DNA of 64,000 nt, from assembly GCA_001179505.1 (NCBI GenBank), contig CDMY01001057.1, positions 1 to 64,000 on the forward strand, given 5' to 3'. The notes beneath the pieces are model-generated. The model saw only the letters and a list, made by a program, of their open reading frames with translations, was not told where the DNA came from and did not search any database. This document shows positions 14,501-45,787 of this stretch, in pieces. This DNA comes from Vitrella brassicaformis CCMP3155 (lineage: Eukaryota; Protista; Chromerida). How positions within the stretch are numbered: the stretch's first letter is position 1; each line of letters starts with the position of its first letter. The position numbers and the translations under genes are program-made.

Positions 14501-17500
14501 CGTCAAGCAGGAGCAGCAGCAGGAGGGCCAGGCCAAGGACGAGGGGCAGGACGACCACCTCTTCGAGGACCAGCCCGCACCAACCGTCAAGAAGGAAGAA
14601 AACAAGAAGAAGACGCTGAAGACCTTCTACACGGTATCACACCCACCCACACCAACCACCACGTGACCATCCCGGTAGTGCATGTCTGTCCATCATAACC
14701 ATCTTCCGTCGTGCCTTCACTTCATTCAACAGTTGGTTGAGGACAAGGGCCTGGCCAGCCTGGCGCAGCACTTCTGCTACTCGCCCGAGGATCTGCTCGA
14801 GAACTTCAATCTCAACGGGCCTCCCTTCAAGCGCAAGGACCTCCCCACCATCACGCGCAGGGACGCAGACGGCAACCCAATGGACCCTGAGGTCGTCGCC
14901 GATGAAGCCGACCTCAAAGAGGTCACTTTAACTCGCAACGCGCACGTGTGCCCCCATCGTGTGGCAATCCCTCTTTGTCTGTTATCCGTCTGTCAGTGGT
15001 TCGGTCAGTACGTCGATCGTCCGTTCTTGACGAGCGAGAAGGTGTCGTCGGCGGTGATGGACTACGAGGCCCGGCGGCTGGCCCGCCATCCCGGCATCCG
15101 CCAGGCGCTGCGGCAGTACTTCGTCAAACACGCCAGGCTGACCACCCGCCCCACGGCCAAGGGCCTCGAGCTCAAGGACCCCGTGCGCAAGGAGTGGGCC
15201 GCCATGCGCATCAAGGACAAACACATCGACGAGTTTCAGGTACGTCAACCACCCCATCAGACACACACACACACGTGGGAGGCGGGCCTCATTTGTCTGT
15301 GTGTGTCGGTCAGATGTTTGGTGTGGAGATGCCCGACCCGCTGCGCGTAATCCGTCCTTGCCGTGATGAGGAGCACCGCATCAACGACGAGCTCGCCGAC
15401 ATCCACACAAAGCGCAACCAGATCGAGGTCGACGTCGACAACGTCCGCAAACAGCGCGACGACCCCAACACGGCGGAGGAGCAGAAGACAGAGCTCCAGG
15501 AGACGGAGAAGAAGCTCGTGGCCGAGATGAGCGAGCTGCGCAACAAGGAGGACGAAATCAATCAGCAGGCGGCCAAGGCCAAGGCGTCGTTCGTTACCAA
15601 AGTGGTGGAGTGGGGCGATGAGGTGCGGGACCTGGGCAACGGCATGTGGCCGTCGAACATGACGCAGCGGCGGGACGGCAGGGCTGCTCGGTACAATAGC
15701 CAGGACATGGCGGTAATCCGGATGGAGATGGAGCCCTGGGAGCGGGTGCACTTCGGCATCGAGTGGGACAGAGACTTTTACTGGGACAGAGAGACCTTCC
15801 TACGAGTCAACAGAGCCGAGAAAAGTGGACTCTTGGAGGTCAGCTAACCCAAACCACGGCACCTTACCCCTCCCATGTGTGTGTGCCTGCATCTGTGTGT
15901 GTCGTCCGTCAGGTGGCCATCCACCTCAACCCGCTCGACCCAGACACCTTCCGCGAGCTGAGGGGCCAGGACGCCCTCGACGCTGAGCAGAAGGAGAAGG
16001 ACGAGCCCAAGGATGACACAGACAAGGATACAGACAGAGACAAAGACAAGGCCAAGGGCAAGGGCAGGCCTTCGTACGACCGTTGGGCGCTGAGCCGGCT
16101 GGTGGAGCGGCTCACGCGGGGGTACCTGGTGGACGAGAAGGAGGATGAGGGCGGGGAGGACCCCTTCAACGGCGTGCGCCGGCAGATTGTGAACCGGCTG
16201 CTGGACAAGGAACTCTTCCCGCTCTTCCGCAAGGAAGTCAGAGAGCTCCTGCTCAAAAGGGTACACACACAAAATTGGGGCGGGGGGCTCCATCCATCCA
16301 TCCATCCATGCATCCATGGTGTGTGTGTTGTGTGTTCTGTGTGTGTGACAGTCCCAGGATTGGGTCATCAAGCTGGCTCAGCGGTCGCTGCGGTGGCGTC
16401 TGGACCTGCAGGGCGTGCGCAAGGCCACCGACCTGCGGTACTTCGACATGCCCGAGGAGGACATCCCCGACGACTCAGAAGAGTTCTCCGAGGACGAGCT
16501 TGAGCTATACCGAAAGGGCGTGTACCGGTCAGCAATACACACACCTTCCCACACACACACACGCGCCGTGTGTGGAGTGCATCGTGTATCTGCGTGCTGT
16601 GTGGTGTTGTCAGGTCGGTTGGTGTGGTGACTGAGGATGTGCGCAACGGGACGATGACGCACTTTGTGGCGGTGGACCCCTTCGGTGAGCACCTTGACCA
16701 CCTCACCATGAGCTTCCTGCTCGACAGACGGCTCGACTACAACTCGCACATCAGGAGGCGACGCGAAAAGGAGCTCGAGACCCTCACAGCATTCTTCGCC
16801 AAAAACAGACCTGACGTGGTCGCCATCGGCGCCTGGGGGAGAAGGTGAGTGAGCAGATCATCTGTGTGTGTAACTCTGTGTGGACTGTGTGTCGTGGATG
16901 GATGGATGGATGTGTGTTGTGCTTTGTGTGTTGTGTGTTTCACCAGGACGTTTGACGTTGAGCAGGAGGTTGGTGCGGTGATCCACAGCCTCTGCAACCC
17001 CGACAGCACAACCGTCGTCCTCAGCTGGCTCGAGAAAACCATCGAGCAGGTGCGTCGGTGCAGTGCCTGACAGACGTACCACCACACCACACCACACCAC
17101 ACGAGCTCGCCGACGTGTGTGTGCATGTGGGTGCGGTGCAGGGCGTTGTGTCGAGTGGCCGTCGGCCCGTGATGACCTATGTCGGTGTGGACGTGGCCCG
17201 CATCTACGCCAAGAGCGACAAGGTGGCCAAGGAACTCAAGTCCATGCCCCCTGCCGTCCTGGAGGTCAGCCAGCGACTTACACACACACACACACACACA
17301 CACACAGGCAGACTCCCTTTCATGTGTGTGTGTGGGCTGTGTGTGGGTGTAGGCGTTGTCGATAGCGCGCTACGTGCAGGACCCGACGAGTGAGATATTG
17401 AACCTCTGGGGCGACCATGACGTCAACCCCCTGCTGCACCTCAAGCTGCACCCGCTGCAAAACATGGTCAGCAACCACACAGACGCGAGCAGGTCACAAA

Positions 17501-17512
17501 CGTGGATGCTCA

Positions 17513-17548
<36 letters not shown>

Positions 17549-20500
17549 TGTGTATGATAGATCCCGCGCGAGAAGCTCGAGGACGCCCTCCTGCAGCCCA
17601 TCATGAGCATCGTCAACAAGGTCAGCCACCGACACACACACACACACAAAGCGGTCGGTATGATGTTCGCCCACCCCACGTCAGGTCGGTGTGGACATCA
17701 ACTTGGTCCGTGACCACGCCCACCTGCAGGGCACCCTCCGGTTCGTCTGCGGCCTGGGGCCCCGCAAGGCCAGCGACATCCTGCACAAACTCATCCAAGA
17801 CGGACACACCGTCAGGGTCAGTCACTCACTCCCTCAACACCACCACCCACCACCCACCACAAACACACACACACACACAGCAACCTCTGTGTGTCTGTCT
17901 GTGTCGTTCGTTCATTCAGTCGCGTAATGAGTTTGCCCGTACTGTGGAGGTGGACGACAAGGGCTACGTGTGGACCAACTGCAAGGCCTTCATCCGGGTG
18001 GACGCGCCGTCGGTGACCGAACGCCGCGATCTCGAGGATGAAGACGACGAAGAAGAGAGGAAGGACGTACCGGACGGTGAGCGGGCTGGCTGCCACCTGC
18101 TCCTGCTGCGGCTGCTGCTGCTGCTGCTGCGTTGATTGGGGTGTGTTGTGTATGGTCACATGTGTGTGTGTGTGCAGATGTGTTGGACCACACGCGCATC
18201 TTTGTGATGCCCTATGGCCACAACAGCCTCGAGCAGGACGAAGAGGACCTGCCAACAAAGGCACAACACACACACACACAGTCTACTGCACTCGCGAGCC
18301 CAGAGCTCATCCGTTCGGGTGTGTGTGTGTGGTTGGTCGCTCAGCGGAAGTACTTCCGTAAGACGTTGATCCAGCACCTGTACAACAGTTGTTTCCTGCA
18401 GCCGGAGGAGCTGCAGCGGCGCGAGCTAGACTTCCAGCAGATGGCGGGCCACGAGAGGGACGCCATCCTCAACAACAGCGTCTGCGATATGATGCGGTAC
18501 GTTCGTACGCCCGCCTGGCTCCTGCCTTAGGCACTATTACACACATGCACTGACACGTATGTGTCTGTTGTGTGTCAACAATCAGGAAGCCCGATGACTT
18601 CGAGGCTCAGTTCGGTGAGCTGGATTTCGACGACGTCTGCAACCAATACGACGAAACCTACCGCGGCGTACACTGCAGGTCTGTCTGCCACCTCCCCCCC
18701 ACCCCCTCTGCCACAGCACATCACATCCATCACACACGTGGTATAAGCTTTCTTTGTGTGTGTCTGTTCTGTGGTGTGCGGCCTGCAGGCCGCTGTACGA
18801 CTTTGTGAAGCGCGAGTTCACCCAGCCGTACGCCGACCTCCGCATGCCCTTCTACACCGAGCTGCCCAAGGCCCTCATGTTCTACTGGATCACCAAGGTA
18901 CACACACTCACCTCACTCACACCCGTCCATCGGTGGCAGGCAACAAGATGGCTGTGTGGTGTGGTGTGGCTGGGTGTGGTGTGCGTGTACTGACTGCAGG
19001 AGGACCGTGACGAGCTGGACCACGGCACTCTGGTGTCGTGCAGGCTCGCCCGAGCCAGCGAGAAGGACACCACCAACACGGCACAGAAATCAGACCAAAT
19101 GAGAGGGGTACGCACCGCGCGCCTTCCCACCCCACCGCCACTCCCACCCCTCACCCCTCACCCCGCGCCGCATTATCGCGTTGTCCGGTCCGTGCTGTGT
19201 GTGTTTGTCTGTCGTGTGTTGTGCAGGAGATGTACGGGCTGCAGCTGCAGGTAGTGATAGAGTCCAACGACCTGGTGGTGGGCATCCGTGAGACCGACAT
19301 GTGCATCTACCTGGCCGAGATCCTCGAGAGGAGGAAGGACCCCGACTGGCTCAACCTGGCACAACAGGGCCTACGCACCGCCTCCATGCGACGGACACCT
19401 AGTGAGGAGGAATGAGGAATATAAGGAGCAATGGAGCACCCATGGCTGTGTGTGTGTGTGTGTGTGTGCAGGTTCCCGTCTTAAGGCAGTCGAAACGTCG
19501 CTCATTTTCAACCACAAGCTCTTCGGCGACTCCATCAAGAAGTACCTGCCAGAAGGTAGGTATCAACCAACGCACACGTGCACACACACACACGCAGTCT
19601 GCCTGTGAAGTGAATGGGTGGCCTCCATCTCATCTCCCCTCTGCCTCATCTATCTGTCCGTCTCCTCTGGCAGGTTCCATTCTGGACGGCCGAATCGAGG
19701 TGATATCCTTCGATCCTCCCGAGAGGATCCGTCAATCGCACGGACAGATGGTGCCGCTGCAGAAGTTCACCCCCGACGGCCGCAGGCGCCAGAGCTTTCT
19801 TATGACGGCATACTTCTCCGAATTCCTCAGCAACGACAAACTCCAGTACACTCAGACAGAGACACGGAGCGGGAGGGATGGAGGGTTGCAATATGCTATA
19901 TCTTGTCGTTTGTCTGGCTTTGGTGTGTGCAGTGACTTCTTGGAGTGCTACGAGCGTCACAAGATCGACATCCACGAGTTCCCCACTAAAGCAGGCGCAT
20001 ACAGCGAGCTGGACCAGCAGCAAAAGTGAGCTGGCACACACCCCGCCATCGATCCATCCATCCATCCATCGATGTGTTTGTGTGTGTCGATTCCAACAGG
20101 GCGGAGGGTCGTCCGCTTGCGCGTCGCAACATCCACCACCCGCACTACAGACCATGGACTGAGGAAAAGGTCAACAAAGCAGACACGCCCACCCAACCGC
20201 CCACATGCACTCCCCTTCCTCCCTCCCTCCCTCCCTCCCTGCGTCACTCACCCCTTCCTCCATGCAGAGTCACGAGGAGCTGTCCAAGGACGAGCACCCT
20301 GTCGGGCAGTGGTACGTGCGGCCGACCCAGGGCACCGGCCTCTTTCTGGACCTCAAGGTGTCCAAAAACCCCAACGTCATCGAAACCTTCCGAATCAGTG
20401 AAGACAAACTCCCCGGCAGAGGTAGGTAAAGGGACGATGAGATGGTGGGCTGGGCGGGGCGGCTGATTGATGGATCACCTGCCCTTGACGTGATGTGGAT

Positions 20501-33958: not shown

Positions 33959-36132
33959 TCACTCACTGACGTGACAACGGCACGCCAAACCACAGCTGGT
34001 CATCCATCCATCCGCCCCCCCTCTGACCGCCGACTTGATGGCCGTTTCCGCCCCCCCGCCCTTGATCTCGGCCGTCAGCCACTGCCACCGCATGCTGAGG
34101 TCTTGTTTGGCCGATCTGACCTCCCAAAGCCCCGGATGGCTACTGCTGGGCTGCCACAACTCCCAGACCCCGTTGATGGGGTTCCAGACCCACCCGCCGT
34201 GGATTGGCCGCCCGCCCACAGTGACCAGCTTGGCCTGGCCGGGCGTGTACGGCAGCTCGTGTGCGGGGATGAGCCTGGTGGGGTCGTTGGGGTCGACGGT
34301 CATGGGGATGAGGATGGGGGGAGGTGCTGCTGCTGTGGTGGCAGGTGGGGGTGGCGGTGTGGGCGGTGGTTGGGCCGGGAAGCCCACATGGTGTGGCGTT
34401 ATCTCGGGCAGCTGGGCTGGGGGCGGGCCCTCGTCCACGACGGCGGCATTGTCGTCCTCTATCTCATCATGACCCCCACCAGCAGTGGGGCCTTGAGTAG
34501 GTGTTGGTGACGCTTCGGCAGCGAACGAGGAGGCGGCGTTCACCTCTTCTGTCGCCTCCACATCACCCCGAGGCAGCTCGGCGGGCACCATGCTGATGCG
34601 ATGGTAGGAGGGGAGTGGGGGGGAGGGGGCTGTCGTGTCGTCCATGGCGGCCTTGGTTTCCTGGAGGACGGTGCGGGCCGCCCGGAGGTTGCTGATGACG
34701 TCAGCCATGGCGCAACGGCTGCAGGGGTCGGTGCAGATGCCCTCGGCTGAGATGGCCGCCACCTGCCCCACCCACTTGTCCACCCAGGCGAAGGCGGACT
34801 CGCCCCTGAGGCTGTAGAGTGGGCAGGCCAAGTAGCGGTCACGTTGCTCCTCGCCCCATAGATAGTGGTCCAGGCCGTCCAGCAGTGGCCGCCCCTTCTC
34901 CGTCATGGCCGCCTCAGACACGACCTCCCAGCACACCGTTGTGAAGAGGTCTTGGTCGCTGTCGTTGCCTCCGTGGATCTCGAGCTGGGGCAAGAGGGGC
35001 AGGAAGCCCCGCAGGACGCGCTGGGTGAGCTTGGCGAAGCTGTAGATGGCAGTCCGCTCTCCCAGCAGCACCCGCTCCCTCTCTCCCTTGCCCACCAGGA
35101 CGCCCCTCTCCCTCAGTCCCTCCTTCATCCCCTCCACTGCCTGCTCCAACGACACCTCCTCCTCTCCTACCGTGGGCAGCATGGACTCCTCCGATGGCCA
35201 CCTCCCGTTGACGAGCAGCTGCTCAGGCGGCCGCTGATATGGCGTGCCCGCCGGCATCATCCGCTGCGCTCGCTGCCTGCCGCGGTCGAGGGGCACCATC
35301 GCTCCCGGCCCGCCAGGAAGTCGTCGGCGGAAGAGGCTGCTCAACTTCCGCGGCCTCACAACGACGCTGTTGGCGAGGTCTATGATGCGGGTGGCTTCGG
35401 CTGCTGGGGGTGTGGGTGTGAATGGGTCGGGGGAGAGGGCTGACCATGCGATGAAGATGTTGGCTATGAAGGCATCCAGACAGAAGACACCCCTCGAGAG
35501 CGCCTCCATGTGGGCCTCAGCGGTCAGCTCGAGCGCCTTGTTGAGGACAGTGAGCTCGCCGATCAGCAGCCTCTCTGCGGCCGCTGCTCCATCGGCGTCG
35601 CGGCGCTCCAGGTAGCGGTGCACGACCTCCTTGAGCCTGAGGCGGTCGTGGTGGAGGCGGTCCTTCTGGGGCCGCAGGAGTTCTTGCAACTCCACCCACA
35701 CGCCATCTGCAGACACACAGGACAACACACCACCACACAACATGTCTGTTTGCAGTGCATTCGTGAACGTGTCGCCAACTCACCCTGCAGCAACTCCATC
35801 GCCAAGCACACGCACGGCACCCTCTCGCCCTCCTCGGTGACGAAAGTCCCCGGCCCCGACGCCAGGCACTTGAGGAAGGGAGGCCGCCCGCCGAAACGGC
35901 GCATGCGGTCGGCCTCCACCTCCATCTCGAGCTTCCTCCTCTCGCTGAAGTCCTCCCCCTCCTGCCCCTCCAGCAACGCTATTTTAAACACCGCCTCGCG
36001 TGGCGCCTCGAGGCTGAAGTATTTCGGCGGGAGGACGCCTCGGTAGACAATGGCAGTGCCGCCCTCGCCGAGTTTGGAGTCTTCGTCGAATGCGATGGGA
36101 GGGCGGCGCTCCAGGATGAGTGTGCAGGGCAT
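33959..36132 (-). CDS. Highly divergent protein kinase-like protein (2 exons) with Pro-rich linker and Trp-rich C-terminal domain
   Basis: KLGEGGTAIVYRG (Gly loop), AVFK, MEVE, CLAMELL (hinge), GVFCLDAFIANIF (catalytic-loop position), IIDLAN (DFG position), TAIYSFAKL, DPCSRCAMADV. Confidence 0.7.
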
Positions 36133-36356
36133 TTTGCGGTGCTGCTGCTGTCGGCTGCTGTTCCTTCGGGGTTGCACGGGGAATTTTGCAACTGTAAGGC
36201 GGGAAGCAATAGGCGAGATGTTTTGAAAGATCTCGCCGCGCGACTGTTTAAACCCTGCAAACCCTACCAAAGAAAACGCCTAATGGTAGCGTACGCGTGC
36301 GCAGCACAGCGATCGCGTACATACGCGCCGCGTGCGAGAGCGACCCGATCGACATC

Positions 36357-36417
36357 ACACCGTCTCCAGCTCGCATCTGCGCCTGGCAGGCAAGCGCATC
36401 CAAGTGATTTTTCGCAC
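36357..36417 (+). repeat. Left terminal direct repeat (A1) of the YR retroelement
   Basis: acaccgtctccagctcgcatctgcgcctggcaggcaagcgcatccaagtgatttttcgcac. Confidence 0.9.
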
Positions 36418-36441
36418 TTTTACACCGTCAAATGTATCACC

Positions 36442-37608
36442 ATGAGGTCCGCCATAGCCATGGTGACACTTCTGATGCTAAGGGCAGCCGCCTCGAAGAA
36501 GCGGCATGAGACGCGCCAGACCCGCCCCGCCGAGAACACCACGTTGCCGCTGCCAGTGTGCCCCGCCAACGCCTCCATCAACATCACCCACCCGCCCCCG
36601 GAGGCCGAGGAAGAAGACGACAACCAGGGGCACCCTGGCGACGAGGGAGGAGGGGCCACCGGCTCGGGAGCAGCCTTCCAGTTCATCGACTTCGCCGCCG
36701 ACATCGCCTCCTTGTACCTCATTGGGGGTGCCACAGACGGCGGAGACGGTCCGCCGGGAGGCCAAGGACCTCGAGGTCTGTCGAAGGCGGCGAGGCAGCG
36801 GATCACTGCCTTGCTCGCCGTCAAGGTCCTGAGCAGGGACTCTAGTCGGTGGGCGAGGTGGGACAAGAAAATACGCCAGACCCTGAAGGACTTCCTCGCC
36901 AACTTGCCCATCAAAAACCCGTTCAAGACACCTCTTTTTAGCCTGAAGAAACAGCACTTCGACAAGGCGAAGTGGATCGTCAACGGCGTCTCCGACCTCC
37001 TCACCAGCTTCATGAGCGGCGACCTTAGAGAGCTGATAGTTTTCGCAATGTCCCGTGAGGCGAGAGCAGCAGCTGTCACACAGCGGACCCAAGAACAACA
37101 ACAACAGCAACAACAGCAACAACAACAGCAACCCAACAACCCAGCCACGGCAGCCGGAGCCTCAGCACTCTCAGCACCGACCCAGCCAACGGGGGACGAC
37201 GCGGACAGCGCCAATCCGAGCACCGGCCAAGTCGGCGGACCACCCGCAGCCGCAGCGGCAGCCAGCCGTCCGACACAGCAACCGCCAGTCAGGACAACAG
37301 AACCCCCACCGGTCGGCTCTAACCGTGCGGCACTGCTTCAAGAAATGCAGGACAACCCGACCGCCATTGAGGCTCTGCAACAAGAACAGCTACAACGGTC
37401 GCGAGATGGCGGAAGACCACAGGACGAGTTCGTGATGGACGACAACGGCAACACGATCGGGCGATCAGACCTGACGGGACAGTGCAGGACTTACATGGTT
37501 TTGCAATCGACACAGACTACTATATGGGCAATACAAGGCCCAGGCAATGTCCACGGCGAGAGGGAGGCCCAACAGACGGGCACCACCTCCCACTCGTATA
37601 CCACATAA
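36442..37608 (+). CDS. Accessory ORF0 inside the retroelement; hydrophobic N-terminus, poly-Q, unknown function
   Basis: Uninterrupted ~388-codon ORF starting MRSAIAMVTLLMLRAAAS, located downstream of A1. Confidence 0.55.
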   Translation: MRSAIAMVTLLMLRAAASKKRHETRQTRPAENTTLPLPVCPANASINITHPPPEAEEEDDNQGHPGDEGGGATGSGAAFQFIDFAADIASLYLIGGATDGGDGPPGGQGPRGLSKAARQRITALLAVKVLSRDSSRWARWDKKIRQTLKDFLANLPIKNPFKTPLFSLKKQHFDKAKWIVNGVSDLLTSFMSGDLRELIVFAMSREARAAAVTQRTQEQQQQQQQQQQQQPNNPATAAGASALSAPTQPTGDDADSANPSTGQVGGPPAAAAAASRPTQQPPVRTTEPPPVGSNRAALLQEMQDNPTAIEALQQEQLQRSRDGGRPQDEFVMDDNGNTIGRSDLTGQCRTYMVLQSTQTTIWAIQGPGNVHGEREAQQTGTTSHSYTT

Positions 37609-37772
37609 CAATGAACAATCCCACGAGACCCTTGCTGGGGTCGCGAGACAACAGCCACACGCACGGCAACAGCCACGCATACGGCACCCCCCTTGTGGGG
37701 TTCACACACCACACGCAAGGCAACCACCTTGCCCCGGGCCTGGCCCCACCACAGACGAATGGCTCCGCCGTT

Positions 37773-38400
37773 CTACACCCAACACCGCAAGTGAGCGGGA
37801 CGGGGGAGGAGAAACAACCGAACAGACACGAACTGGTGTCTCTGACCCTACTCTCCGTCAGGGCACGGGCAAAGGTCAGATGCACCAAGACACGAGCGGT
37901 CCCGCCTTATTCTTCCCCACACTGCAAGTGAGTGGGATGGGAAAGAAGAAACAACTGAACAGACACGGACTGGTGTCTCCGACCCTACTCGCACGTCAGG
38001 GCACGGGCCAAGGTCAGGCATACCAACAAACGGGCCAAGGTCAGGTTTACCAACAAACGAGCGGTCCCGCTTAACTGTTTCCCACACCGCAAGTGAGCGG
38101 GCTGGGAAAGAAGAAACAACTGAACAGGCACAAGCTGGTGTCTCTGACCCTACTCGTACGTTAGGGCACCGACCAAGGTCAGGCACACCAACAAACGAGC
38201 GGCCCCGCCCTACTGTTTCCCACAACGTAAGTGAGCGGGATGGGAAAGAAGAAACCACTGAACAGACACGGACTGGTGTCTCTGACCCTACTCGTTCATT
38301 AGGGCACCGACCAAGGTCAGGTGCACCAACGAACGGGCGATTCCGCTCTACTATTGCCCACACCGCAAGTGAGCGAGACGGGAAAAAAAGAAACAATCGG
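37773..38400 (+). repeat. Tandem array of ~138-bp units (4 full + 1 partial) inside the retroelement
   Basis: Anchor c(t)aagtgag recurs at about 37788, 37926, 38090, 38228 and 38367. Unit 2 carries an extra ~26-bp internal duplication. Confidence 0.9.
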
Positions 38401-38432
38401 TCAGACAATGACCCACGTCTCTATCCCTGCTC

Positions 38433-39785
38433 GTGCGTCAGGGTGTCAACTCTGGCAATATGCGCGGTGAGGGAGTGAGCACGTTGCGACACGGGTTCCT
38501 GACGGCGCAGACTTCAGGCCCGAGGTATTCCAACCCGGCCGAGCACGGACCGGCCCCTTTAGCGTGGGGTGCGCCGTCGCTCACACAGCCGGGCGTTACG
38601 ATAGCCGGCGCGGGCACCTCTGCAACAATCCCCCCGGCATACGGAGTCGGCCAGGGAACTAACCCAGTCCCACTCGCACCGCTGGCACCCAGAGGGGCCC
38701 AGGCGCTAGCGGCTCACATAGGGGCCACGCCTTTTGGAACGAACACGGTGCAGGCCGTCCAACCGGTACGCAAACGGACCATCTACCATCAACGCCACTC
38801 GCTCAGTGGCTGGCTGGCTGTGTCTCTACCACAGGCGGCCGCTCCAGGCAGCGGCATGTGGTGGATACTAAGAGGCCGACAGGCAGGGCAGCCCAGCCTA
38901 ACGTCGGACCTGGACGCACTTCTGCTTACCCCGGAGGTAGCAGACAACGACCTCGTCAGAAGGGTGGTGTCCGCGCTACGAGACATCCGCCAAACCGTCT
39001 ACCAACAAGAGCAGCTACTGAACGGCAATCCACTGCCGTACTACCTCCCGGACCAGCTGCAGCAGTCCCTGGTGGCATGCCTGGCCGTCAATGAGAGGAC
39101 GCCGGCACAGAAGGACTCGGCCTCAGCCACACAGGGCGACGCCGTTATCCTCACAAACACAGACGCACAGAAGATTACCGCGACAACCGTCCTAGAGGCA
39201 CTGGAAGTGTGCGACAGCGAGTACCGCGGATCGCACTTCGAACAAGACAGGGCTCAGGCCGACCACTTTGCGGACTTCCGCTCTGCCCTCCAGGCATGCT
39301 CGGCGGCCCACTCCCACCGGCATGTGTGGGCAGGGACTGTCGTGGCCGCCATACGGCAGAAGGGAGGGCTGTACTCGGGAACCCGCTACCCAATGACCCT
39401 CGACCATAGCATGGTTAGAAGACTGGGGCAGACAGCGCTGACGCGAACGAACACACTCCCGGCGGCTGCGCCCGCAGCGAGCAACACGGCGAGACCACTC
39501 ACGAGTGCGGGCAGCCGCGCAACAGCCCGTCCGCTCAGAGCACTGGCCGCGCAAACCGCCCAGACGTCGGCCACCACAACAACCCCCAACGCGAGCGGGG
39601 TCCCGCTGGGACAGTGCGTCAACTGCATTTTGGGACACGGCAAGGCACCCAACACCGAAGAGGTGAAACACTCAGTGCGACAGTGCCAGGAGGAATGTAG
39701 GATCCAGTGCAAGTACTGCGGCCTGCATCATTTTCACCACCAGTGCCCCAAGAACCCGCACTTCGACGTCAACAAGGGTACGTAA
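38433..39785 (+). CDS. gag: Gag-like ORF with C-terminal Cys/His zinc knuckles
   Basis: CVNC..HSVRQC and CKYCGLHHFHHQC at the C-terminus; position upstream of RT. Confidence 0.7.
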   Translation: MRQGVNSGNMRGEGVSTLRHGFLTAQTSGPRYSNPAEHGPAPLAWGAPSLTQPGVTIAGAGTSATIPPAYGVGQGTNPVPLAPLAPRGAQALAAHIGATPFGTNTVQAVQPVRKRTIYHQRHSLSGWLAVSLPQAAAPGSGMWWILRGRQAGQPSLTSDLDALLLTPEVADNDLVRRVVSALRDIRQTVYQQEQLLNGNPLPYYLPDQLQQSLVACLAVNERTPAQKDSASATQGDAVILTNTDAQKITATTVLEALEVCDSEYRGSHFEQDRAQADHFADFRSALQACSAAHSHRHVWAGTVVAAIRQKGGLYSGTRYPMTLDHSMVRRLGQTALTRTNTLPAAAPAASNTARPLTSAGSRATARPLRALAAQTAQTSATTTTPNASGVPLGQCVNCILGHGKAPNTEEVKHSVRQCQEECRIQCKYCGLHHFHHQCPKNPHFDVNKGT

Positions 39786-40017
39786 GGCACACACCGGGAA
39801 CACATAGACAGGCCGAGACAAAAGGCCTAAAGAGCCCAGTTTTAGTAGTCGAGTCTGATGCGAGGGAGTTACGGTCTGCCAACATGAGAGGGGTTGCGTT
39901 GGAGGGAGAGAAGGCAGCAGACTAGCAAACGTGAAAGACAACCGATGCGAAAGCAAATGTGCGAACTCCATACCTCAAAGCACTGAGACATGTTGAATTC
40001 GTTGAATTCGCATACAA

Positions 40018-42349
40018 TTGGAGATCACACCACCCGACACTCGGCCACATACGTGTGCACGCCTCATCGTGGCAGGCTCACGGCCCCATGTCTCCTCCCA
40101 ATGTGATGTCTCTGCAGGCGTCATCATGTCTCTAGAGGTGATAGTCTCGGCACTTGGAGACAGGCTCACAAATCCGAGGGCTAGGCGGGCAATCGCGTAT
40201 CAGCTCCCACAGAGCTTCACAGAAGCCTTTGGTCATTCAACTATAACGGTACCGTCTAACAACCCGATCACGCCCTGGACCGCGGGCAGGCGACTGTCGG
40301 CCACGGGCGCCGAATCGCTCGGCTTCAACAACGCATTTTGCCAGGCCATCCACAACGGGGTGCCCCTGCTCGTATGCCGAAACATTGCATCTTACCACAG
40401 AGAGAACTACCGGTCAGTGGAGACACACCTGGACAAGGTGGCGGGAGAAAGACAGTGGCTAATCGACAAGGGATACGTGGAGGAGTGTATCTGCCGGCCC
40501 TACGTGGTGTCTCCGCTGGGCGCTATCGTTAAAACAGCCCAGCGCTATCGTTAAAACAAAGCCGACGCCTCCCGACTCCTCAGACACGCCGGCAATCAAA
40601 GTACGGTTGGTCATGGACTTCACGAAGTCCGGGGTCAACGCGGCAGTCTTCCCACCGCCCTTCGACCTTCCGAAAATACACACAGCACTCTCCCTGCTCA
40701 AACCGGGCTTTTTTCAAGCCAAAATCGACATGAAAGACGGATTCCTACACCTGCCAGTCGACCCGCGCGAGGCGGACCTTCTGGGGTTTCAGTCACCCAT
40801 CAATGTCAAGTATTACCGTTACCAATTCGTCCCGTTCGGCCTCGCAACAGCGCCCTGGCTGTTTTGTCACCTAATGGAGTACGTCAAGACAAGACTGAGC
40901 GAACGAGGCGTACACGCCGTGCTGGTGTACGTCGACGACTGGTACTTCGTTGGACAGACACACGAAGACGTGCAACACGCGTTGGACGTTGCGAGAGAGG
41001 TGTTCGCTGTCATGGGCTTAGAAGAGAGCGTGGAGAAGGCCGAAGAGCCCACCACGAAGACCGACTTCGTCGGCCTCGTTATAGACACCAGACAACGCAC
41101 CATCTCGATGAAGGAGAGCAAGAGAGACAAGCTTCTTGCGGACATAGATCAGCTGCTGGACAATCGCCGACAGGAGACTCACAAGCTGCAGCACGTACTG
41201 GCCACGGTCGGCAAGCTAACGCACTACGCCTTCCTACACCCGGCGGGACGGCACAAGTTGCGGCGGGCATGGGACATACAAGCAGCACTGGTGCAAGAAC
41301 ACTGCGTCTCGGCCACTCAAGGCAGCCGCAAAGACCAGCCAAGCGTACAGATCTCGAGAGAAGATCAAGTGTGGGGAGACATGAGGTGGTGGAGACAACT
41401 CATCAACAGAGGCCCAAGCAGACCACTCCACGTGGGGCACGACGGTCATTTCTTCCTGTGGGAACCAACGTCACACCTCACGAGTGCCCTACAAGCGGAC
41501 GTCCTCTCCCTGGACCCGCAACGGGCAGCAGCGACAGCCGAACAAGGCCTGGTCGTGTTGTTTACCGACGCCTCGGATCGCGGATGGTCAGGCACCGTGG
41601 GCAGCCGCAAATGGCAGGGCGCGTGGTCAACGTCTTCGCACGAGGACCTCCCGTCCATCAACTTCCGAGAACTGCTGGCCGTCCTTTTCTCCATTCAGCG
41701 GTTGGTTAAGACGCTGAACAAAGGCGCTCGACTGTTGGTTCGATCGGACAGCGTGTCGACAGTGGGCTGGATCAACGACAAGGAGGAAAGCTCTCCGGCG
41801 GTGCAGCGCGTACTGGCACGCATCTTCGCCCTCCTGGAGGCAGTCAACGGAGAGATAGTGGCGGTCCACATACCCGGAAAAGACAACACCGTAGCGGACG
41901 AACTCTCCCGCTTCTCACTCTTTGCCGACTCACGAGGGACACGTCTCTCAGCACCCTCTGTGGAGACGCTCGCCACTGCGGTGCGACTGCCGCGCAAGGA
42001 CCTCGAGTTCCTCCCTCAACTGCAGCTCCAACAGGCATGGCCCCATCCGGCGGAGACCGAGGGATCAGCCGTCATCCTCGCCCTCACACCAGAGGACGTC
42101 AAGGCCGCAGGCGCATGGATGCGACACGCACTTCTGTTCAGCAAAAAGCCACACCTCGCGGTCGTACCAAGCTCACTGTCCACGTTCCTTACGGAAGAGC
42201 CCGGGCATGCATGTGAGTTCAAGTTCACGTGGCCGGCCGGCAAAGCCTTCTTCGACGTCATAGCTTCAACGCCAGACTGCGAGGCAACAGAGAATTGGAG
42301 GGAGGCGACTCCAACACAAGTCGCCCTGGACGTATTCTTACAAACATAA
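40018..42349 (+). pseudogene. pol: Reverse transcriptase / RNase H ORF, frameshifted by a 22-bp insertion at 40520-40558
   Basis: SPLGAIVK..RLVMD, DMKDGFLHLPV, PFGLATAPWLF, VYVDD, FVGLVID; RNase H motifs FTDAS, INFRELLAV, VRSDS, HIPGKDNTVADELSR. Confidence 0.92.
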
Positions 42350-42530
42350 GGACACCCAGTCGACATGCCAGAGAGGTGTACGAACAGACGGGCATAAAGA
42401 CAAACGCTCTCGAAGAGCACGATGACCCAACCCCAAAAGCGCTCGAAGTGAACTATGGATTTAACCCACCACGTACAAAATGTAACGCCGAGCAAACGGC
42501 AAAGCCCGCAGTCTCAATATCACAGCCGGG

Positions 42531-43628
42531 ATGTTTCCCGAGCAGCCTCACCAGTGCGTAGTGTGCAAGGGCACCGGCTTCCTGCGCGTCAACTTGTCAA
42601 ATAGAAACGGGGCCACGGAGCACTTCAGCTCGGCCCTCCGATGCCCATGCCGTCTCGGCGCAGGAGGGCAGCAATGCGAGAAGACCGCAAGAATGGCGGA
42701 GGTCATCAACACCGCCTTTCGAGCCACGCTGCAGCCATCCACGGTGCGGGACTACGAGCGCGTCATTGAGACGTGCATGCAGGCAAGGGAGCTGTTCCCG
42801 CTGGACTCACCGGAGAAGATTATGTGCATCTTCTCCCTGTTCCTGCCGTGCCACACCACGCGCTTCCCTCGGGTCCGCGCGGCACTGAAGCTGTGGCACG
42901 AGATGCATAACTTCGCCGAACCGCCATTTGAACATGCCCTTGTCAAGAGGTTTCTTCGAGGGCTCCAGGTACACCCGGAGGTGTCGGCCACTCGACACGA
43001 GACGGACGTCTTCCCATGGAAGGCCGTCCCACCGCTGCTGAAGCTATGGTTGCTACCGCGGCCAGGACAGCAGTCACCGTCGCTGACATGCCTCCGCAAC
43101 GGAGCCATCTTCCTGCTGCAATTCTTCGCCGTGAAGCGCATTCGAGAAATCCTCGACCTCACCGCAGCAGACCTCATCTTGACAGCGGACAGCATCGTCC
43201 TCTACATACGCAAGAGCAAAACCGACCGCACGGGGAAGGGATTCCACATGCGAATCCCACCCACCAACTCGCTCTTCCCCCAGCTGTCAACAGCACTCCG
43301 AGCATACCTCGAGGTCGCCCCGCAGGAACCGACACAACATCTGTTCCAGTCAACAGATCCCACGGGCACGAGGTGGACAGGCCGGCGGCTGTGCCCCTCC
43401 TCGTTCAACTGCGCTCTCAAGAGGACGGCCGAAGCGGTAGCTGTCACAGGCAAGATTGCCTCGCACAGCCTCAGGAAAGGGGGCGCATCGTGGTATCTAC
43501 TGAAGGGCAACCCGCCTGAGCTGGTCAAGCGAGTGGGCAACTGGAAAGGCCCATCGTGGGAGATCTACGCTAAGTTCTCACTGGAAGACATGGCAGCTAT
43601 GCTGCAAGAAAACGATGATGATGAATGA
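42531..43628 (+). CDS. Tyrosine recombinase (DIRS-type) with N-terminal CxxCxGxG..CxC motif
   Basis: Catalytic residues in order: FFAVKRIRE (R), IRKSKTD (K), SHSLRKGGA (HxxR), GNW (W), EIY (Y). Confidence 0.93.
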   Translation: MFPEQPHQCVVCKGTGFLRVNLSNRNGATEHFSSALRCPCRLGAGGQQCEKTARMAEVINTAFRATLQPSTVRDYERVIETCMQARELFPLDSPEKIMCIFSLFLPCHTTRFPRVRAALKLWHEMHNFAEPPFEHALVKRFLRGLQVHPEVSATRHETDVFPWKAVPPLLKLWLLPRPGQQSPSLTCLRNGAIFLLQFFAVKRIREILDLTAADLILTADSIVLYIRKSKTDRTGKGFHMRIPPTNSLFPQLSTALRAYLEVAPQEPTQHLFQSTDPTGTRWTGRRLCPSSFNCALKRTAEAVAVTGKIASHSLRKGGASWYLLKGNPPELVKRVGNWKGPSWEIYAKFSLEDMAAMLQENDDDE

Positions 43629-43667
43629 ATACGTGCGAACACCGATTCCAACTACAGCCTCATCAGA

Positions 43668-43728
43668 ACACCGTCTCCAGCTCGCATCTGCGCTTGGCAG
43701 GCAAGCGCATCCAAGTGATTTTTCGCAC
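43668..43728 (+). repeat. Right direct repeat (A2) of the YR retroelement
   Basis: 60/61 identical to 36357-36417. Confidence 0.9.
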
Positions 43729-43886
43729 CCACCCCCCCAACCCGCCGGTCCCCCCCGGGCACGCCACGTGCACGGGCATGGGACCGGATTGGGCCCTGCC
43801 ACTTTTATGCGGTATGACAGTGGAGACACGTTGCGGCAGCGCAGCGTGCGGATCCGACAGCGGCGACGGGCAGTCGGCGCAACCCC

Positions 43887-45787
43887 GTGGAAGCGGAGCG
43901 CGCCGAGCGTATGAACCTGAGCGTTCTGGTGCAAAGGAGTCTGGATCCTCCACTTTTTTTCCTCGACGACTTGAAGCTTGTTTTCGCTAGCAAAGAGCCT
44001 CGGCTGTTACCTGATTGCTGTCCGGACCATCATGTCGTTTCTGAAATGCAAGGCCAGTGGAGGAAGAACGCTCAGGGCAAGGGCAATGACGACTCGGCGG
44101 TAAGCGAGAGGACCACAGGGCAGTGATGGTTGAATGTATGGTTATGTGTCCATTCCATGGTGCAGGGCGCGACGGGGGCGACAAGTCGACGGTATGCAGC
44201 ACACAAGGATCTGTGTCTGTGTGCTGGACTGGCGATTCCCCTTGTGCAGCTGTATCGACACAACGGCCCAGGTCAAGAAGGCCAAGGAGCTCAAGACTGC
44301 CAAGAAAAAGATCTCCCAGGCAAGATCAGATGGGCTGCTGGAATGATGGAAACATGGGCGACGATGGATGGATGGATTAATGGATGGATGGATGGATGGT
44401 TCTGTGCGTGCGTGCCGAATGTGTGGTGCACGCGGACGAATGGGAATGGATGCCTTGCAGAAGAAGCAGGACCAGGTGGGAAGTGCGTCCATCTCATCTA
44501 GCACAGCACATGTGCATCCACCTCTGTCTCGACACACCACACCCCTTTCTCTCTTGCAGACGACGCAGGAGAAGAAAAAGGCTGAGCAGGACTTTGACAG
44601 ACGCATGCAGGTGGGCTGGCAGAAACGAGGGAGGGAGGGAGGAGCGAGAGGAGGGGATACACAGAAACACAGATGACCATCCGTGAGTCCTTTGGCTGAA
44701 TGGCTGGCTTCTCAGACAAAGTCGATGGTGCTCAAGGACGACGACGAAGAGGACGACTAACGACTACGAAGATACTACGGAGGTAGGCGGATAGACCCCC
44801 CAACACACACGCACACACGTGAATTGTATCGACGAACCACAACACACACACCTTGTCTCCCTCTGTGGTGTCTGTGTGTGTGTGTGTGTGCGTGTGCGTG
44901 TGTGTGTTAGGTACATCCGTGACGTCTGATACACACCGAATCAGACACATACGGCAGCTGCTGTGGCCTGTACAGGGTGGCGAGGATATGCGTGTGACTG
45001 AGGACGACTACCAGAAATCTCCCAAGACGATCGTACCCGGTAGGCAGCGACTGCACCACACTCACACACACGAGGGGGGCCCCACACACGCCAACACGAT
45101 TGAGTGGCTGCACTGTCGCGTGTGCCAGGGCTCGGGTAGATGATGGGCAAGATGAGCAGTTTCTTCACCGGTGGCGGCGGCGGCGCTGCTGACAGTAGCG
45201 GGCAGAAGAAGCCCGTGGGACGTGACGCCCTGGGTACACACACGTAAACCACACCACAAGGAAGGCCTGCATCTGTCTGTGTTTCAGGGCGTGTGGTTAA
45301 GGAGCAGGAGGAGGTCGACCAAGCTGCGAAGAAACACACAAAGCACACGACGGGAGGACTAGTAAACACCTCCAAGCACCAAACACGCCCAGACAAACAA
45401 ACAAACAAACATCCGCGCTTCAAGAAACGCGTCGCTGTCGTGTTTTGTTGATGTCAGCTTGGCATCCCGCTCTCCTTCCCGCCCATCAAGACGCAGGGCA
45501 AGAGTATGCAAAGACACACAAAGACAGACAGACAGATGCACCCTCATGTCGCTGTGTGTGTGTCTTGTCAGAACCGGCTCCTCCTCCGAAGCCCAAGGTA
45601 GCCAGCCCCCACACAACAAACACACCAGTGAGCGTGTGTGTTGTCTTTCTGCGTCGGCTGCGTGTACGTACGTATTGTGCAGGTGGTCCGACAGCCGGAG
45701 TTGAAGGTGGGGCGGGAGATCCACACCACGTGGTCGGACGATCCGGCCCCCAGGCCCTACACCTCCGTCCTGCCCAGGTCGGAGTAG
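43887..45787 (+). CDS. Hypothetical multi-exon charged protein(s)
   Basis: Small exons flanked by GT/GC-AG introns (VKKAKELKTAKKKISQ, TTQEKKKAEQDFDRRMQ, VVRQPELKVGREIHTTW). Exon chain unresolved and may be two genes. Confidence 0.35.

What the first reader, a model, noticed from the sequence alone, without database searches (positions are those of the whole stretch)
36357..43728. Near-complete tyrosine-recombinase retrotransposon with an atypical four-ORF layout in a probable chromerid
Layout: A1 - ORF0 - 138-bp array - gag - RT/RH+extension - ZnF-YR - A2. The repeats are direct, as in split-direct-repeat Ngaro/PAT elements, not inverted as in DIRS-1. They are 60/61 identical and the RT, RNase H and YR catalytic residues are intact, implying a recent insertion. 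Parasitic apicomplexans are largely free of transposons, so an element in a free-living relative is informative. The accessory ORF, internal array and zinc-finger YR together may define a new clade. I cannot check whether it has already been catalogued.
Basis: partly seen in the sequence, partly recalled or inferred. Interest (0 to 1): 0.75.

Follow-up and report, generated by a model that had tools for sequence, protein, structure and literature searches.

The report
Damaged tyrosine-recombinase retrotransposon in Vitrella
This is a real 7.6-kb retrotransposon of the tyrosine-recombinase (DIRS) kind in the alga Vitrella brassicaformis, whose published repeat table lists none. This copy is damaged, and its kind is already known from other alveolates.

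Summary

Three corrections:
- **Ends:** the element runs 36283-43913, not 36357-43728. The left end is 135 nt, and the right end is A plus a linker plus a 157-nt B repeat.
- **Repeats:** this copy lacks the internal B1 and the first 74 nt of A2, so its split direct repeats are incomplete.
- **pol:** a 22-nt insertion holding a 17-nt duplication (40520-40563) splits pol into two frames.

The genome is Vitrella brassicaformis CCMP3155, whose published TE table gives DIRS = 0 bp. This is the only coding copy of its family. Two enzyme-less elements (contigs C802 and C548) share its termini. More distant YR elements (C499, C620/C610, C33) carry canonical A1...B1-A2-B2 repeats.

There is no methyltransferase domain. 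The nearest RT/RH among 1.84 billion representatives is 34-37% identical, so Ngaro versus PAT-derived could not be decided.

ORF0 is an orphan, but C620/C610 carry an ORF at the same position with a similar hydrophobic leader.

The scan had already noted other YR-type elements in this genome.

Verdict: new variant of a known kind, moderate interest.

The parts
36283..36417 (+). The element starts at ATGGTAGCG.
   Evidence: It is 89-92% identical over 133-136 nt to the left ends of the elements on C802 (two copies) and C548. Partial copies lie on C396, C655 and C453. DNA to the left is unique in the genome.
36442..37608 (+). ORF0, 388 codons from the first ATG after A1. It has an MR + hydrophobic leader, three N-x-S/T sites at residues 32-49, and a poly-Q run (37096-37131).
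   Evidence: The first 213 codons have GC3 0.78 and GC2 0.50, like gag, pol and YR. It has no Pfam match and no paralogue in the genome. The Atlas model is disordered, pLDDT 0.39. A positional analogue with a similar leader exists in C620/C610.
37628..37725 (+). Spacer segment shared with the enzyme-less element on C548.
   Evidence: It is 84-91% identical to three or four repeated segments (the middle one matched in two pieces) at C548:41580-42110.
37737..38443 (+). Tandem array of about five units of 137-165 nt. It ends at the start of gag.
   Evidence: TRF scores 498-825, 83-85% matches. Its codon-position GC is not coding-like and its RNA fold is not significant, z -1.1. One solo unit plus the start of gag lies at C697:12304-12481, 85% identical.
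38460..39785 (+). Gag-like ORF (441 codons) with a CX2CX3HX4C knuckle at 39708-39746.
   Evidence: It has no Pfam match. Relatives in the genome: C324 (48% identity), C264 (79%), C741, C602, and next to RT/YR on C610 and C620.
40126..40554 (+). N-terminal piece of pol, in a different frame from the RT piece.
   Evidence: Residues 27-182 of the open frame align with residues 147-301 of the single 881-codon pol frame on C499, 41% identity, E 5e-31.
40520..40563 (+). The break in pol: a 17-nt exact duplication with 5 nt between the copies (22 nt extra), which shifts the frame by +1.
   Evidence: The sequence was read directly. The peptide AIVKT is encoded twice, once in each frame.
40607..42349 (+). 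pol RT/RNase H piece plus a ~130-residue C-terminal extension (41951-42346). YVDD is at 40928-40939 and the RNase H motifs at 41561-41911.
   Evidence: Pfam RVT_1 and RVT_3. The AlphaFold model has pLDDT 78, and Foldseek top hits are caulimovirus, MLV and Ty3 RTs. The extension has no Dam/MT match by Pfam or hhalign. P521 is invariant and W564 nearly invariant in the 19-sequence alignment.
42531..43628 (+). Tyrosine recombinase (365 codons) with an N-terminal CxxCxGxG...CxC motif (42555-42650).
   Evidence: Pfam Phage_integrase. The Cys motif is conserved in the YRs of C499 and C33 and absent from seven outside YR or RT-YR proteins. Atlas structural matches start only at residue 36-52.
43668..43728 (+). 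A2, a 61-nt copy of the last part of the left repeat. Its first 74 nt (X) are missing, and so is the preceding B1.
   Evidence: no second X or B anywhere in 36000-44200.
43729..43913 (+). Linker (28 nt) plus the right terminal repeat B2 (43757-43913). The element ends at GAGCGTATG.
   Evidence: 43757-43913 is 78-81% identical to both B1 and B2 of the C802 element, and its last 64 nt are 89% identical to the C548 right end. DNA to the right is unique.

Best explanation
Window 36283-43913 is one inserted copy of an autonomous retrotransposon of the DIRS order, the retrotransposons that integrate with a tyrosine recombinase. It belongs to a lineage so far seen only in Vitrella brassicaformis.

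**Coding content.** From left to right it encodes:
- an orphan 5' ORF (ORF0);
- a gag-like protein with a zinc knuckle;
- a pol with reverse transcriptase, RNase H and a conserved C-terminal extension that is not a methyltransferase;
- a tyrosine recombinase with an extra N-terminal four-cysteine motif.

**Inferred life cycle.** This follows the model published for split-direct-repeat elements. The element is transcribed and the RNA is copied into cDNA. The cDNA ends are regenerated and joined using the repeated A and B segments. The recombinase then inserts the closed molecule without a target-site duplication.

**What is shown here.** The coding capacity and the terminal architecture are shown. 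So is the absence of a target-site duplication. In the related element on C802, the internal B1-A2 junction reads as the element's right end followed directly by its left end.

**State of this copy.** It is most likely no longer able to move by itself. pol is frameshifted by a 22-nt insertion. The internal B1 and the first 74 nt of A2 are missing, most simply through a deletion of about 240 nt.

**Related elements.** Enzyme-less elements with the same ends (C802, 7.8 kb; C548, 4.6 kb) were probably mobilised in trans by enzymes of this family.
For: - **Domains and motifs:**
- **Break in pol:**
- **Ends and lack of a target duplication:** one search gives the left flank ...CGCCTA|ATGGTAGCG and the right end GAGCGTATG|AACCTG. 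The flanks are unique in the genome.
- **Family termini:**
- **C802 element:** A1/A2 are 96% identical over 160 nt and B1/B2 100% over 169 nt. The internal junction reads ...GAGCGTAT-GGTAGCG.... No RT or YR lies inside.
- **C548:** it is colinear with C802.
- **Canonical repeats elsewhere:** the distant YR elements on C620 and C33 have A1...B1-A2-B2.
- **No methyltransferase:**
- **Tree:** the window's RT/RH is sister to C499's (support 99-100). They sit in a mostly MT-less clade nested among MT-bearing proteins.
- **Published definitions:** PMC9210276, PMC6681497, PMC4157794.
Against: - There is only one coding copy of this family, so no consensus exists against which to tell copy-specific damage from family features.
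- The genome is a short-read, gap-closed assembly. The 22-nt insertion could therefore be a gap-closing artefact.
- Family copies sit next to assembly gaps or contig ends, so copy number is probably underestimated.
- There is no transcript, circle-junction or empty-site evidence.
- Trans-mobilisation of C802 and C548 rests on terminal similarity of only 78-92%.
Confidence: 0.85

Rival explanations
1. The copy is intact and possibly active. On this reading the 22-nt insertion in pol is an assembly or gap-closing artefact, or is bypassed by +1 frameshifting. The 61-nt A repeat alone would then give enough terminal redundancy.
For: All catalytic motifs are intact. ORF0, gag, YR and both pol pieces are otherwise open. 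A1 and A2 are 60/61 identical. The assembly used velvet with GapFiller and IMAGE, which can create small duplications; that last point is my own knowledge.
Against: The 17-nt duplication with 5 nt of filler is a typical mutational insertion. The break lies inside the conserved start of the RT domain, not at a gag-pol boundary where programmed frameshifts occur. B1 and X are also missing. No second copy of the family with coding capacity exists.
Confidence: 0.2
2. The 61-nt repeats are crossover products. A circular cDNA carrying a single A recombined with the A segment of a pre-existing solo terminal remnant (X-A-linker-B). On this reading X and B are older target DNA rather than parts of this copy.
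For: The sequence X-A-linker-B occurs uninterrupted as A2-B2 on C802. At the single A1/A2 difference, A2 carries the state seen in all relatives. DIRS-type elements are reported to insert into their own kind; that is my own knowledge, not checked here.
Against: It needs a solo remnant at exactly this unique site and a truncated circle. One informative base is too little. X and B are exactly the outer ends of the related elements, as expected if they are this copy's own ends.
Confidence: 0.1
3. It is a true Ngaro-group element, rather than a lineage derived from MT-bearing PAT- or DIRS-like ancestors by loss of the methyltransferase.
For: Structure: gag, RT/RH and YR in that order, no methyltransferase, and split direct repeats in the family. 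This matches the published definition.
Against: 86 of the 150 best RT/RH relatives carry the Dam-like MT domain. The window's clade is nested among them in trees rooted with one LTR-type outgroup. Loss of MT from Pat1-like elements, mimicking Ngaro, has been described, and structural features are homoplasious (PMC4157794). No named Ngaro sequence could be included.
Confidence: 0.3

Closest known systems
Ngaro-like elements (DIRS order; Goodwin & Poulter 2004, as summarised in PMC9210276 and PMC6681497)
   Same: The ORF order is gag-like, RT/RH, YR. There is no methyltransferase domain. The family has split direct repeats A1...B1-A2-B2 (canonical on C802, C620 and C33). An extra ORF is tolerated: Xenopus Ngaro elements carry a fourth ORF.
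   Different: The extra ORF here lies 5' of gag and has no known domain; it is not an SGNH hydrolase after the YR. This copy lacks B1 and part of A2. The YR has an N-terminal Cys4 motif. RT/RH affinity to named Ngaro references is untested, and the nearest relatives include many MT-bearing proteins.
PAT-like elements, including the MT-less Pat1 derivative of Caenorhabditis briggsae (PMC4157794)
   Same: They have split direct repeats and a zinc-knuckle gag. Loss of MT inside an MT-bearing radiation, as in C. briggsae, fits the tree found here.
   Different: PAT-like elements are defined by having the MT domain, which is absent here. The one nematode protein available as a presumed (not confirmed) PAT-type anchor (C. 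remanei, P0161) falls in another clade.
Symbiodinium DIRS-type retrotransposons, with and without DNMT (PMC5890265)
   Same: The host is an alveolate (myzozoan). The repeat arrangement is A-coding-B-A-B, and the YR is in a separate ORF.
   Different: There is no cytosine methyltransferase here. Sequence relationship could not be tested because no Symbiodinium sequences were on hand.
DIRS-1 of Dictyostelium and DIRS1-like elements
   Same: They share RT/RH plus YR and insertion without a target duplication.
   Different: DIRS1-like elements have inverted terminal repeats, an internal complementary region and an MT domain. None of these is present here.

Membership tests
DIRS order (tyrosine-recombinase retrotransposons) | RT/RNase H and a tyrosine recombinase encoded together, with no DDE integrase or endonuclease | tested here: met
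   Pfam RVT_1/RVT_3 and Phage_integrase lie on the same strand inside one repeat-bounded unit. The RT fold is confirmed.
DIRS order (tyrosine-recombinase retrotransposons) | Insertion without a target-site duplication | tested here: met
   The flanks CGCCTA / AACCTG differ. Only the element's own ATG is seen at both ends.
DIRS1-like | Inverted terminal repeats plus an internal complementary region | tested here: not met
   The terminal repeats are direct. The only inverted repeats are 20-27 nt at 72-86% complementarity, chance level.
DIRS1-like / PAT-like | Dam-like methyltransferase domain after RNase H | tested here: not met
   There is no PF05869 match at E <= 1. An iterated profile that finds the domain in 88 related proteins misses the window protein. 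hhalign of the extension against the MT domain gives probability 1.5%.
Ngaro-like / PAT-like / VIPER-like | Split direct repeats A1 ... B1-A2-B2 | tested here: inconclusive
   This copy has A1, a truncated A2 and B2, but no B1. The enzyme-less relative on C802 has the full pattern. So do the distant YR elements on C620 and C33.
Ngaro-like | RT/RH (and YR) group with named Ngaro references in a phylogeny | not testable with these tools
   No named Ngaro, VIPER or DIRS-1 sequences could be obtained.
VIPER-like | Kinetoplastid lineage; RT/RH group with VIPER/TATE | not testable with these tools
   No reference sequences were available. The host is an alveolate.

The most novel reading that the evidence does not exclude
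The 5' ORF with an MR + hydrophobic leader and clustered N-x-S/T sites is a functional secreted or membrane protein. It is present in this element and, at the same position, in the unrelated-in-sequence C620/C610 family. That would make Vitrella's YR retroelements carriers of an envelope-like or host-interaction gene. This family would also move enzyme-less partners, one of which an earlier unchecked note reports to carry an intron-bearing host-type gene.
Probability: 0.07. Interest if true: 0.75.

Novelty: new variant of a known kind. Interest (0 to 1): 0.4.

Why it matters
- **It corrects the published picture.** The genome paper's TE table gives DIRS = 0 bp for Vitrella. In fact Vitrella holds several diverged lineages of tyrosine-recombinase retrotransposons.
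- **It gives an enzyme-bearing relative to the enzyme-less elements.** Split-repeat elements elsewhere in the genome had looked like orphans. This element shares their ends.
- **It may help trace transposon loss.** Chromerids are the free-living sisters of apicomplexans, so the inventory helps reconstruct which transposons the common ancestor had and lost.
- **The lineage features are cheap to test.** These are the Cys4-YR, the non-MT extension of pol and the 5' leader ORF. None of them overturns what is known about the DIRS order.

Tried and rejected
- **Small-RNA gene as an insertion target.** I asked whether the repeated X-A segment is a small RNA gene (snRNA or spliced leader). Rfam at E <= 1 on four loci found nothing.
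- **YR remnant upstream of C802's A1.** A short LVKR-like resemblance and a 10-mer shared with the window were not supported (tblastn; blastn E 0.03). I treat them as chance.
- **The pol extension as a degenerate methyltransferase.** Rejected.
- **A structured RNA in the array unit.** The fold z-score is -1.1.
- **An intron as the cause of the pol frame break.** The only GT...AG spans I could pick out by eye with the right phase are 34 nt. The peptide AIVKT is encoded twice, so an insertion is the simpler reading. This was not tested with RNA data.
- **Homology of ORF0 to the first ORFs of C620 and C33.** It is not significant for C620 (z 1.2-3.6, driven by low complexity). For C33 it is weak: one 33-residue motif, 5 of 1000 shuffles reach the score.
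- **dN/dS of the C620/C610 5' ORF.** The ratio is 0.8, against 0.7-1.0 in the other frames, so it is uninformative.
- **Naming the nearest relatives.** Cluster look-ups gave no names or taxa. The word-based searches found almost nothing. The metagenome scan gave only 24-42% identical fragments on short contigs.
- **Empty-site paralogue.** None exists; both flanks are unique.
- **Steps deliberately left out.** The pieces were searched apart.
Full report
**Observation**

- The repeat finder gives a 61-nt direct repeat at 36357-36417 and 43668-43728 with one mismatch. The mismatch is C/T at 36383/43694.
- A tandem array of about five units of 137-165 nt lies at about 37737-38443.
- On the + strand lie ORF0 (36442-37608 from the first ATG after A1), a 441-codon ORF with a zinc knuckle (38460-39785), an RT/RNase H ORF (40607-42349; Pfam RVT_1 1e-12, RVT_3 3e-4) and a tyrosine recombinase (42531-43628; Phage_integrase 6e-10).
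- The RT YVDD, the four RNase H acidic positions and the YR R/K/HxxR/W/Y positions are in place.
- A model of the pol piece has pLDDT 78 and matches caulimovirus, MLV and Ty3 reverse transcriptases.

**Host**

The assembly has 72,700,666 bases in 1064 contigs. That is exactly the published Vitrella brassicaformis CCMP3155 assembly (PMC4501334). That paper's TE table lists DIRS as 22,842 bp in Chromera and 0 bp in Vitrella.

**Correction 1: pol is broken**

- Stop-to-stop frames show pol in two pieces, 40006-40551 and 40463-42346, in different frames.
- Both pieces align end to end with a single 881-codon open frame on contig C499. The first piece's residues 27-182 match C499 residues 147-301. 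The second piece's residues 46-504 match C499 residues 299-755.
- At the break the sequence holds an exact 17-nt duplication separated by 5 nt, 22 extra bases in all at 40520-40563. The peptide AIVKT is encoded twice, once in each frame.
- This is a frameshifting insertion at the start of the RT domain.
- It could be a gap-closing artefact, because the assembly is short-read and gap-filled. Only reads can settle that.
They were searched apart.

**Correction 2: the ends**

- Aligning the flanks of the 61-nt repeats with weaker matches elsewhere in the genome shows that the left repeat really begins at 36283. This adds 74 nt, which I call X.
- The right terminus continues to 43913. It consists of a 28-nt linker and a 157-nt segment, B.
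- Outside these limits the DNA is unique in the genome.
- There is no target-site duplication.

**Related elements that share the ends**

*C802.* On the minus strand, 242586-234784, lies a 7.8-kb unit with the textbook split-direct-repeat layout.
- A1 and A2 are 96% identical over 160 nt. B1 and B2 are 100% identical over 169 nt.
- The order is A1 ... B1-A2-B2, and the interior is mostly tandem repeats.
- It has no RT or YR.
- Its A is 89% identical to the window's X+A, and its B is 78-81% identical to the window's B.
- Its internal B1-A2 junction reads as the right end followed directly by the left end. The window's two ends overlap that junction by ATG. This is what the published circle or junction-copy model for such elements predicts.

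*C548.* Region 40802-45406 is colinear with the C802 unit. It also contains repeats of a 98-nt segment found between ORF0 and the array in the window.

So the enzyme-less type exists in at least two copies, and it has an enzyme-bearing relative in this window.

My results add a second copy and a candidate autonomous partner.

**Correction 3: incomplete repeats in this copy**

A sensitive self-search finds no second X and no B1 anywhere in 36000-44200. The copy therefore reads X-A1 ... A2(61 nt)-linker-B2.

The simplest account is loss of about 240 nt (B1 plus X). An alternative is recombination of a one-A circle with a solo remnant. It cannot be excluded, but it rests on one informative base.

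**Other YR elements in the genome**

Protein searches find relatives at 30-40% identity:
- C499, the best preserved, with open frames of 881 codons (pol) and 502 codons (YR), cut by the contig start;
- C33;
- C620 and C610, which are about 95% identical to each other;
- C863 and C929.

C620 and C33 have canonical A1...B1-A2-B2 repeats. At the DNA level the window element is single-copy. Fragments of closer relatives survive:
- gag pieces on C324, C264, C741 and C602;
- one array unit plus the start of gag on C697;
- X fragments next to gaps or contig ends.

Because of those gaps and contig ends, copy number is probably underestimated.

**Classification**

- There is no methyltransferase. Pfam finds none at E <= 1. 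A profile that detects the Dam-like domain in 88 related proteins misses the window protein. hhalign gives probability 1.5%.
- The ~130-residue extension is nevertheless conserved in the nearest clade: P521 is invariant and W564 nearly invariant in the 19-sequence alignment (residue-level alignment of five of them).
- Against 1.84 billion representatives, the best non-self hits are 34-37% identical.
- In trees the window and C499 are sisters (support 99-100). They sit inside a mostly MT-less group, which is itself nested among MT-bearing sequences.
- The nearest relatives are unnamed metagenome or SRA proteins.
- By structure the element is Ngaro-like, using the definitions in PMC9210276.
- By sequence neighbourhood it may equally be a PAT- or DIRS-derived lineage that lost MT. 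That route is described for C. briggsae in PMC4157794, which also warns that these structural traits are homoplasious.
- Named references were not available, so membership stays open.

**ORF0, the array and the zinc-finger YR**

*ORF0*
- Its first 213 codons have coding-like codon-position GC.
- It has no Pfam match, no paralogue, no outside relative and a disordered predicted structure.
- It starts with MR, then a hydrophobic stretch, then three N-x-S/T sites.
- The C620/C610 family has, at the same position right after A1, a 435-codon ORF that is open in both copies. It has a very similar MR + hydrophobic leader and a poly-N run instead of poly-Q, but no significant sequence similarity.
- C33's first ORF shares one weak motif with ORF0.
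- A 5' ORF is therefore recurrent in Vitrella YR elements, but its function is unknown.

*Array.* It does not look coding or structured. Its unit and the neighbouring spacer occur in relatives, so the sequence belongs to the family. The five-fold amplification may be specific to this copy.

*YR Cys motif.* The CxxCxGxG...CxC motif is conserved in three Vitrella lineages. It is missing from the few outside YRs available. It lies outside the part that matches other eukaryotic YR structures.

**What is known**

- YR retrotransposons with the A-coding-B-A-B layout are described in Symbiodinium (PMC5890265).
- Perkinsus is listed among DIRS1-like hosts (PMC3266345).
- The kind is therefore known in alveolates. 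Its presence in Vitrella, the lineage features and the autonomous/enzyme-less pairing are new.

**Limits**

- No RNA data or reads were available.
- The neighbouring window ORFs gave no Pfam matches.

Noticed in passing
G000:C802:234784-242586 (minus strand; loci L016, L007, L008): A 7.8-kb enzyme-less element with canonical split direct repeats (A1/A2 96%, B1/B2 100%) and a tandem-repeat interior. Its termini are 78-89% identical to those of the window element. By length and layout it appears to be the unit of earlier notes s1-226929 and s1-235845.
   Followed up: yes
G000:C548:40802-45406 (locus L017): A 4.6-kb unit colinear with the C802 element. It has one X-A at the left and only the last ~65 nt of B at the right. 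It also holds repeats of the window's 37628-37725 segment.
   Followed up: partly
G000:C499:1472-5187 (locus L013): The best-preserved relative: an uninterrupted 881-codon pol frame overlapping a 502-codon YR frame with the same Cys motif. It is cut off by the contig start, so gag and the left repeat are missing.
   Followed up: partly
G000:C620:19515-28005 and G000:C610:32980-42841: Two ~95% identical copies of a distant YR family with canonical A1...B1-A2-B2 repeats, internal duplications of the RT/YR region and several assembly gaps. Both keep a 435-437-codon 5' ORF with a hydrophobic leader.
   Followed up: partly
G000:C33:20289-28514 (minus strand): Another distant YR element with canonical split repeats (A1/A2 98.6%), RT in two pieces and a duplicated YR region with gaps. 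More repeat copies lie at 17134-17822.
   Followed up: no
G000:C697:12304-12481; C324:17440-19724; C264:134470-135648; C741:2927-3127; C602:12298-12429: Isolated fragments of closer relatives of the window element: one array unit plus the start of gag (85% DNA identity), and gag pieces (48-79% amino-acid identity). No RT or YR lies nearby.
   Followed up: no
window 36420-37223 (minus strand): Long antisense ORFs (267 and 217 codons) overlap ORF0. They are most likely a by-product of high GC and the CAA/CAG run at 37090-37140.
   Followed up: no
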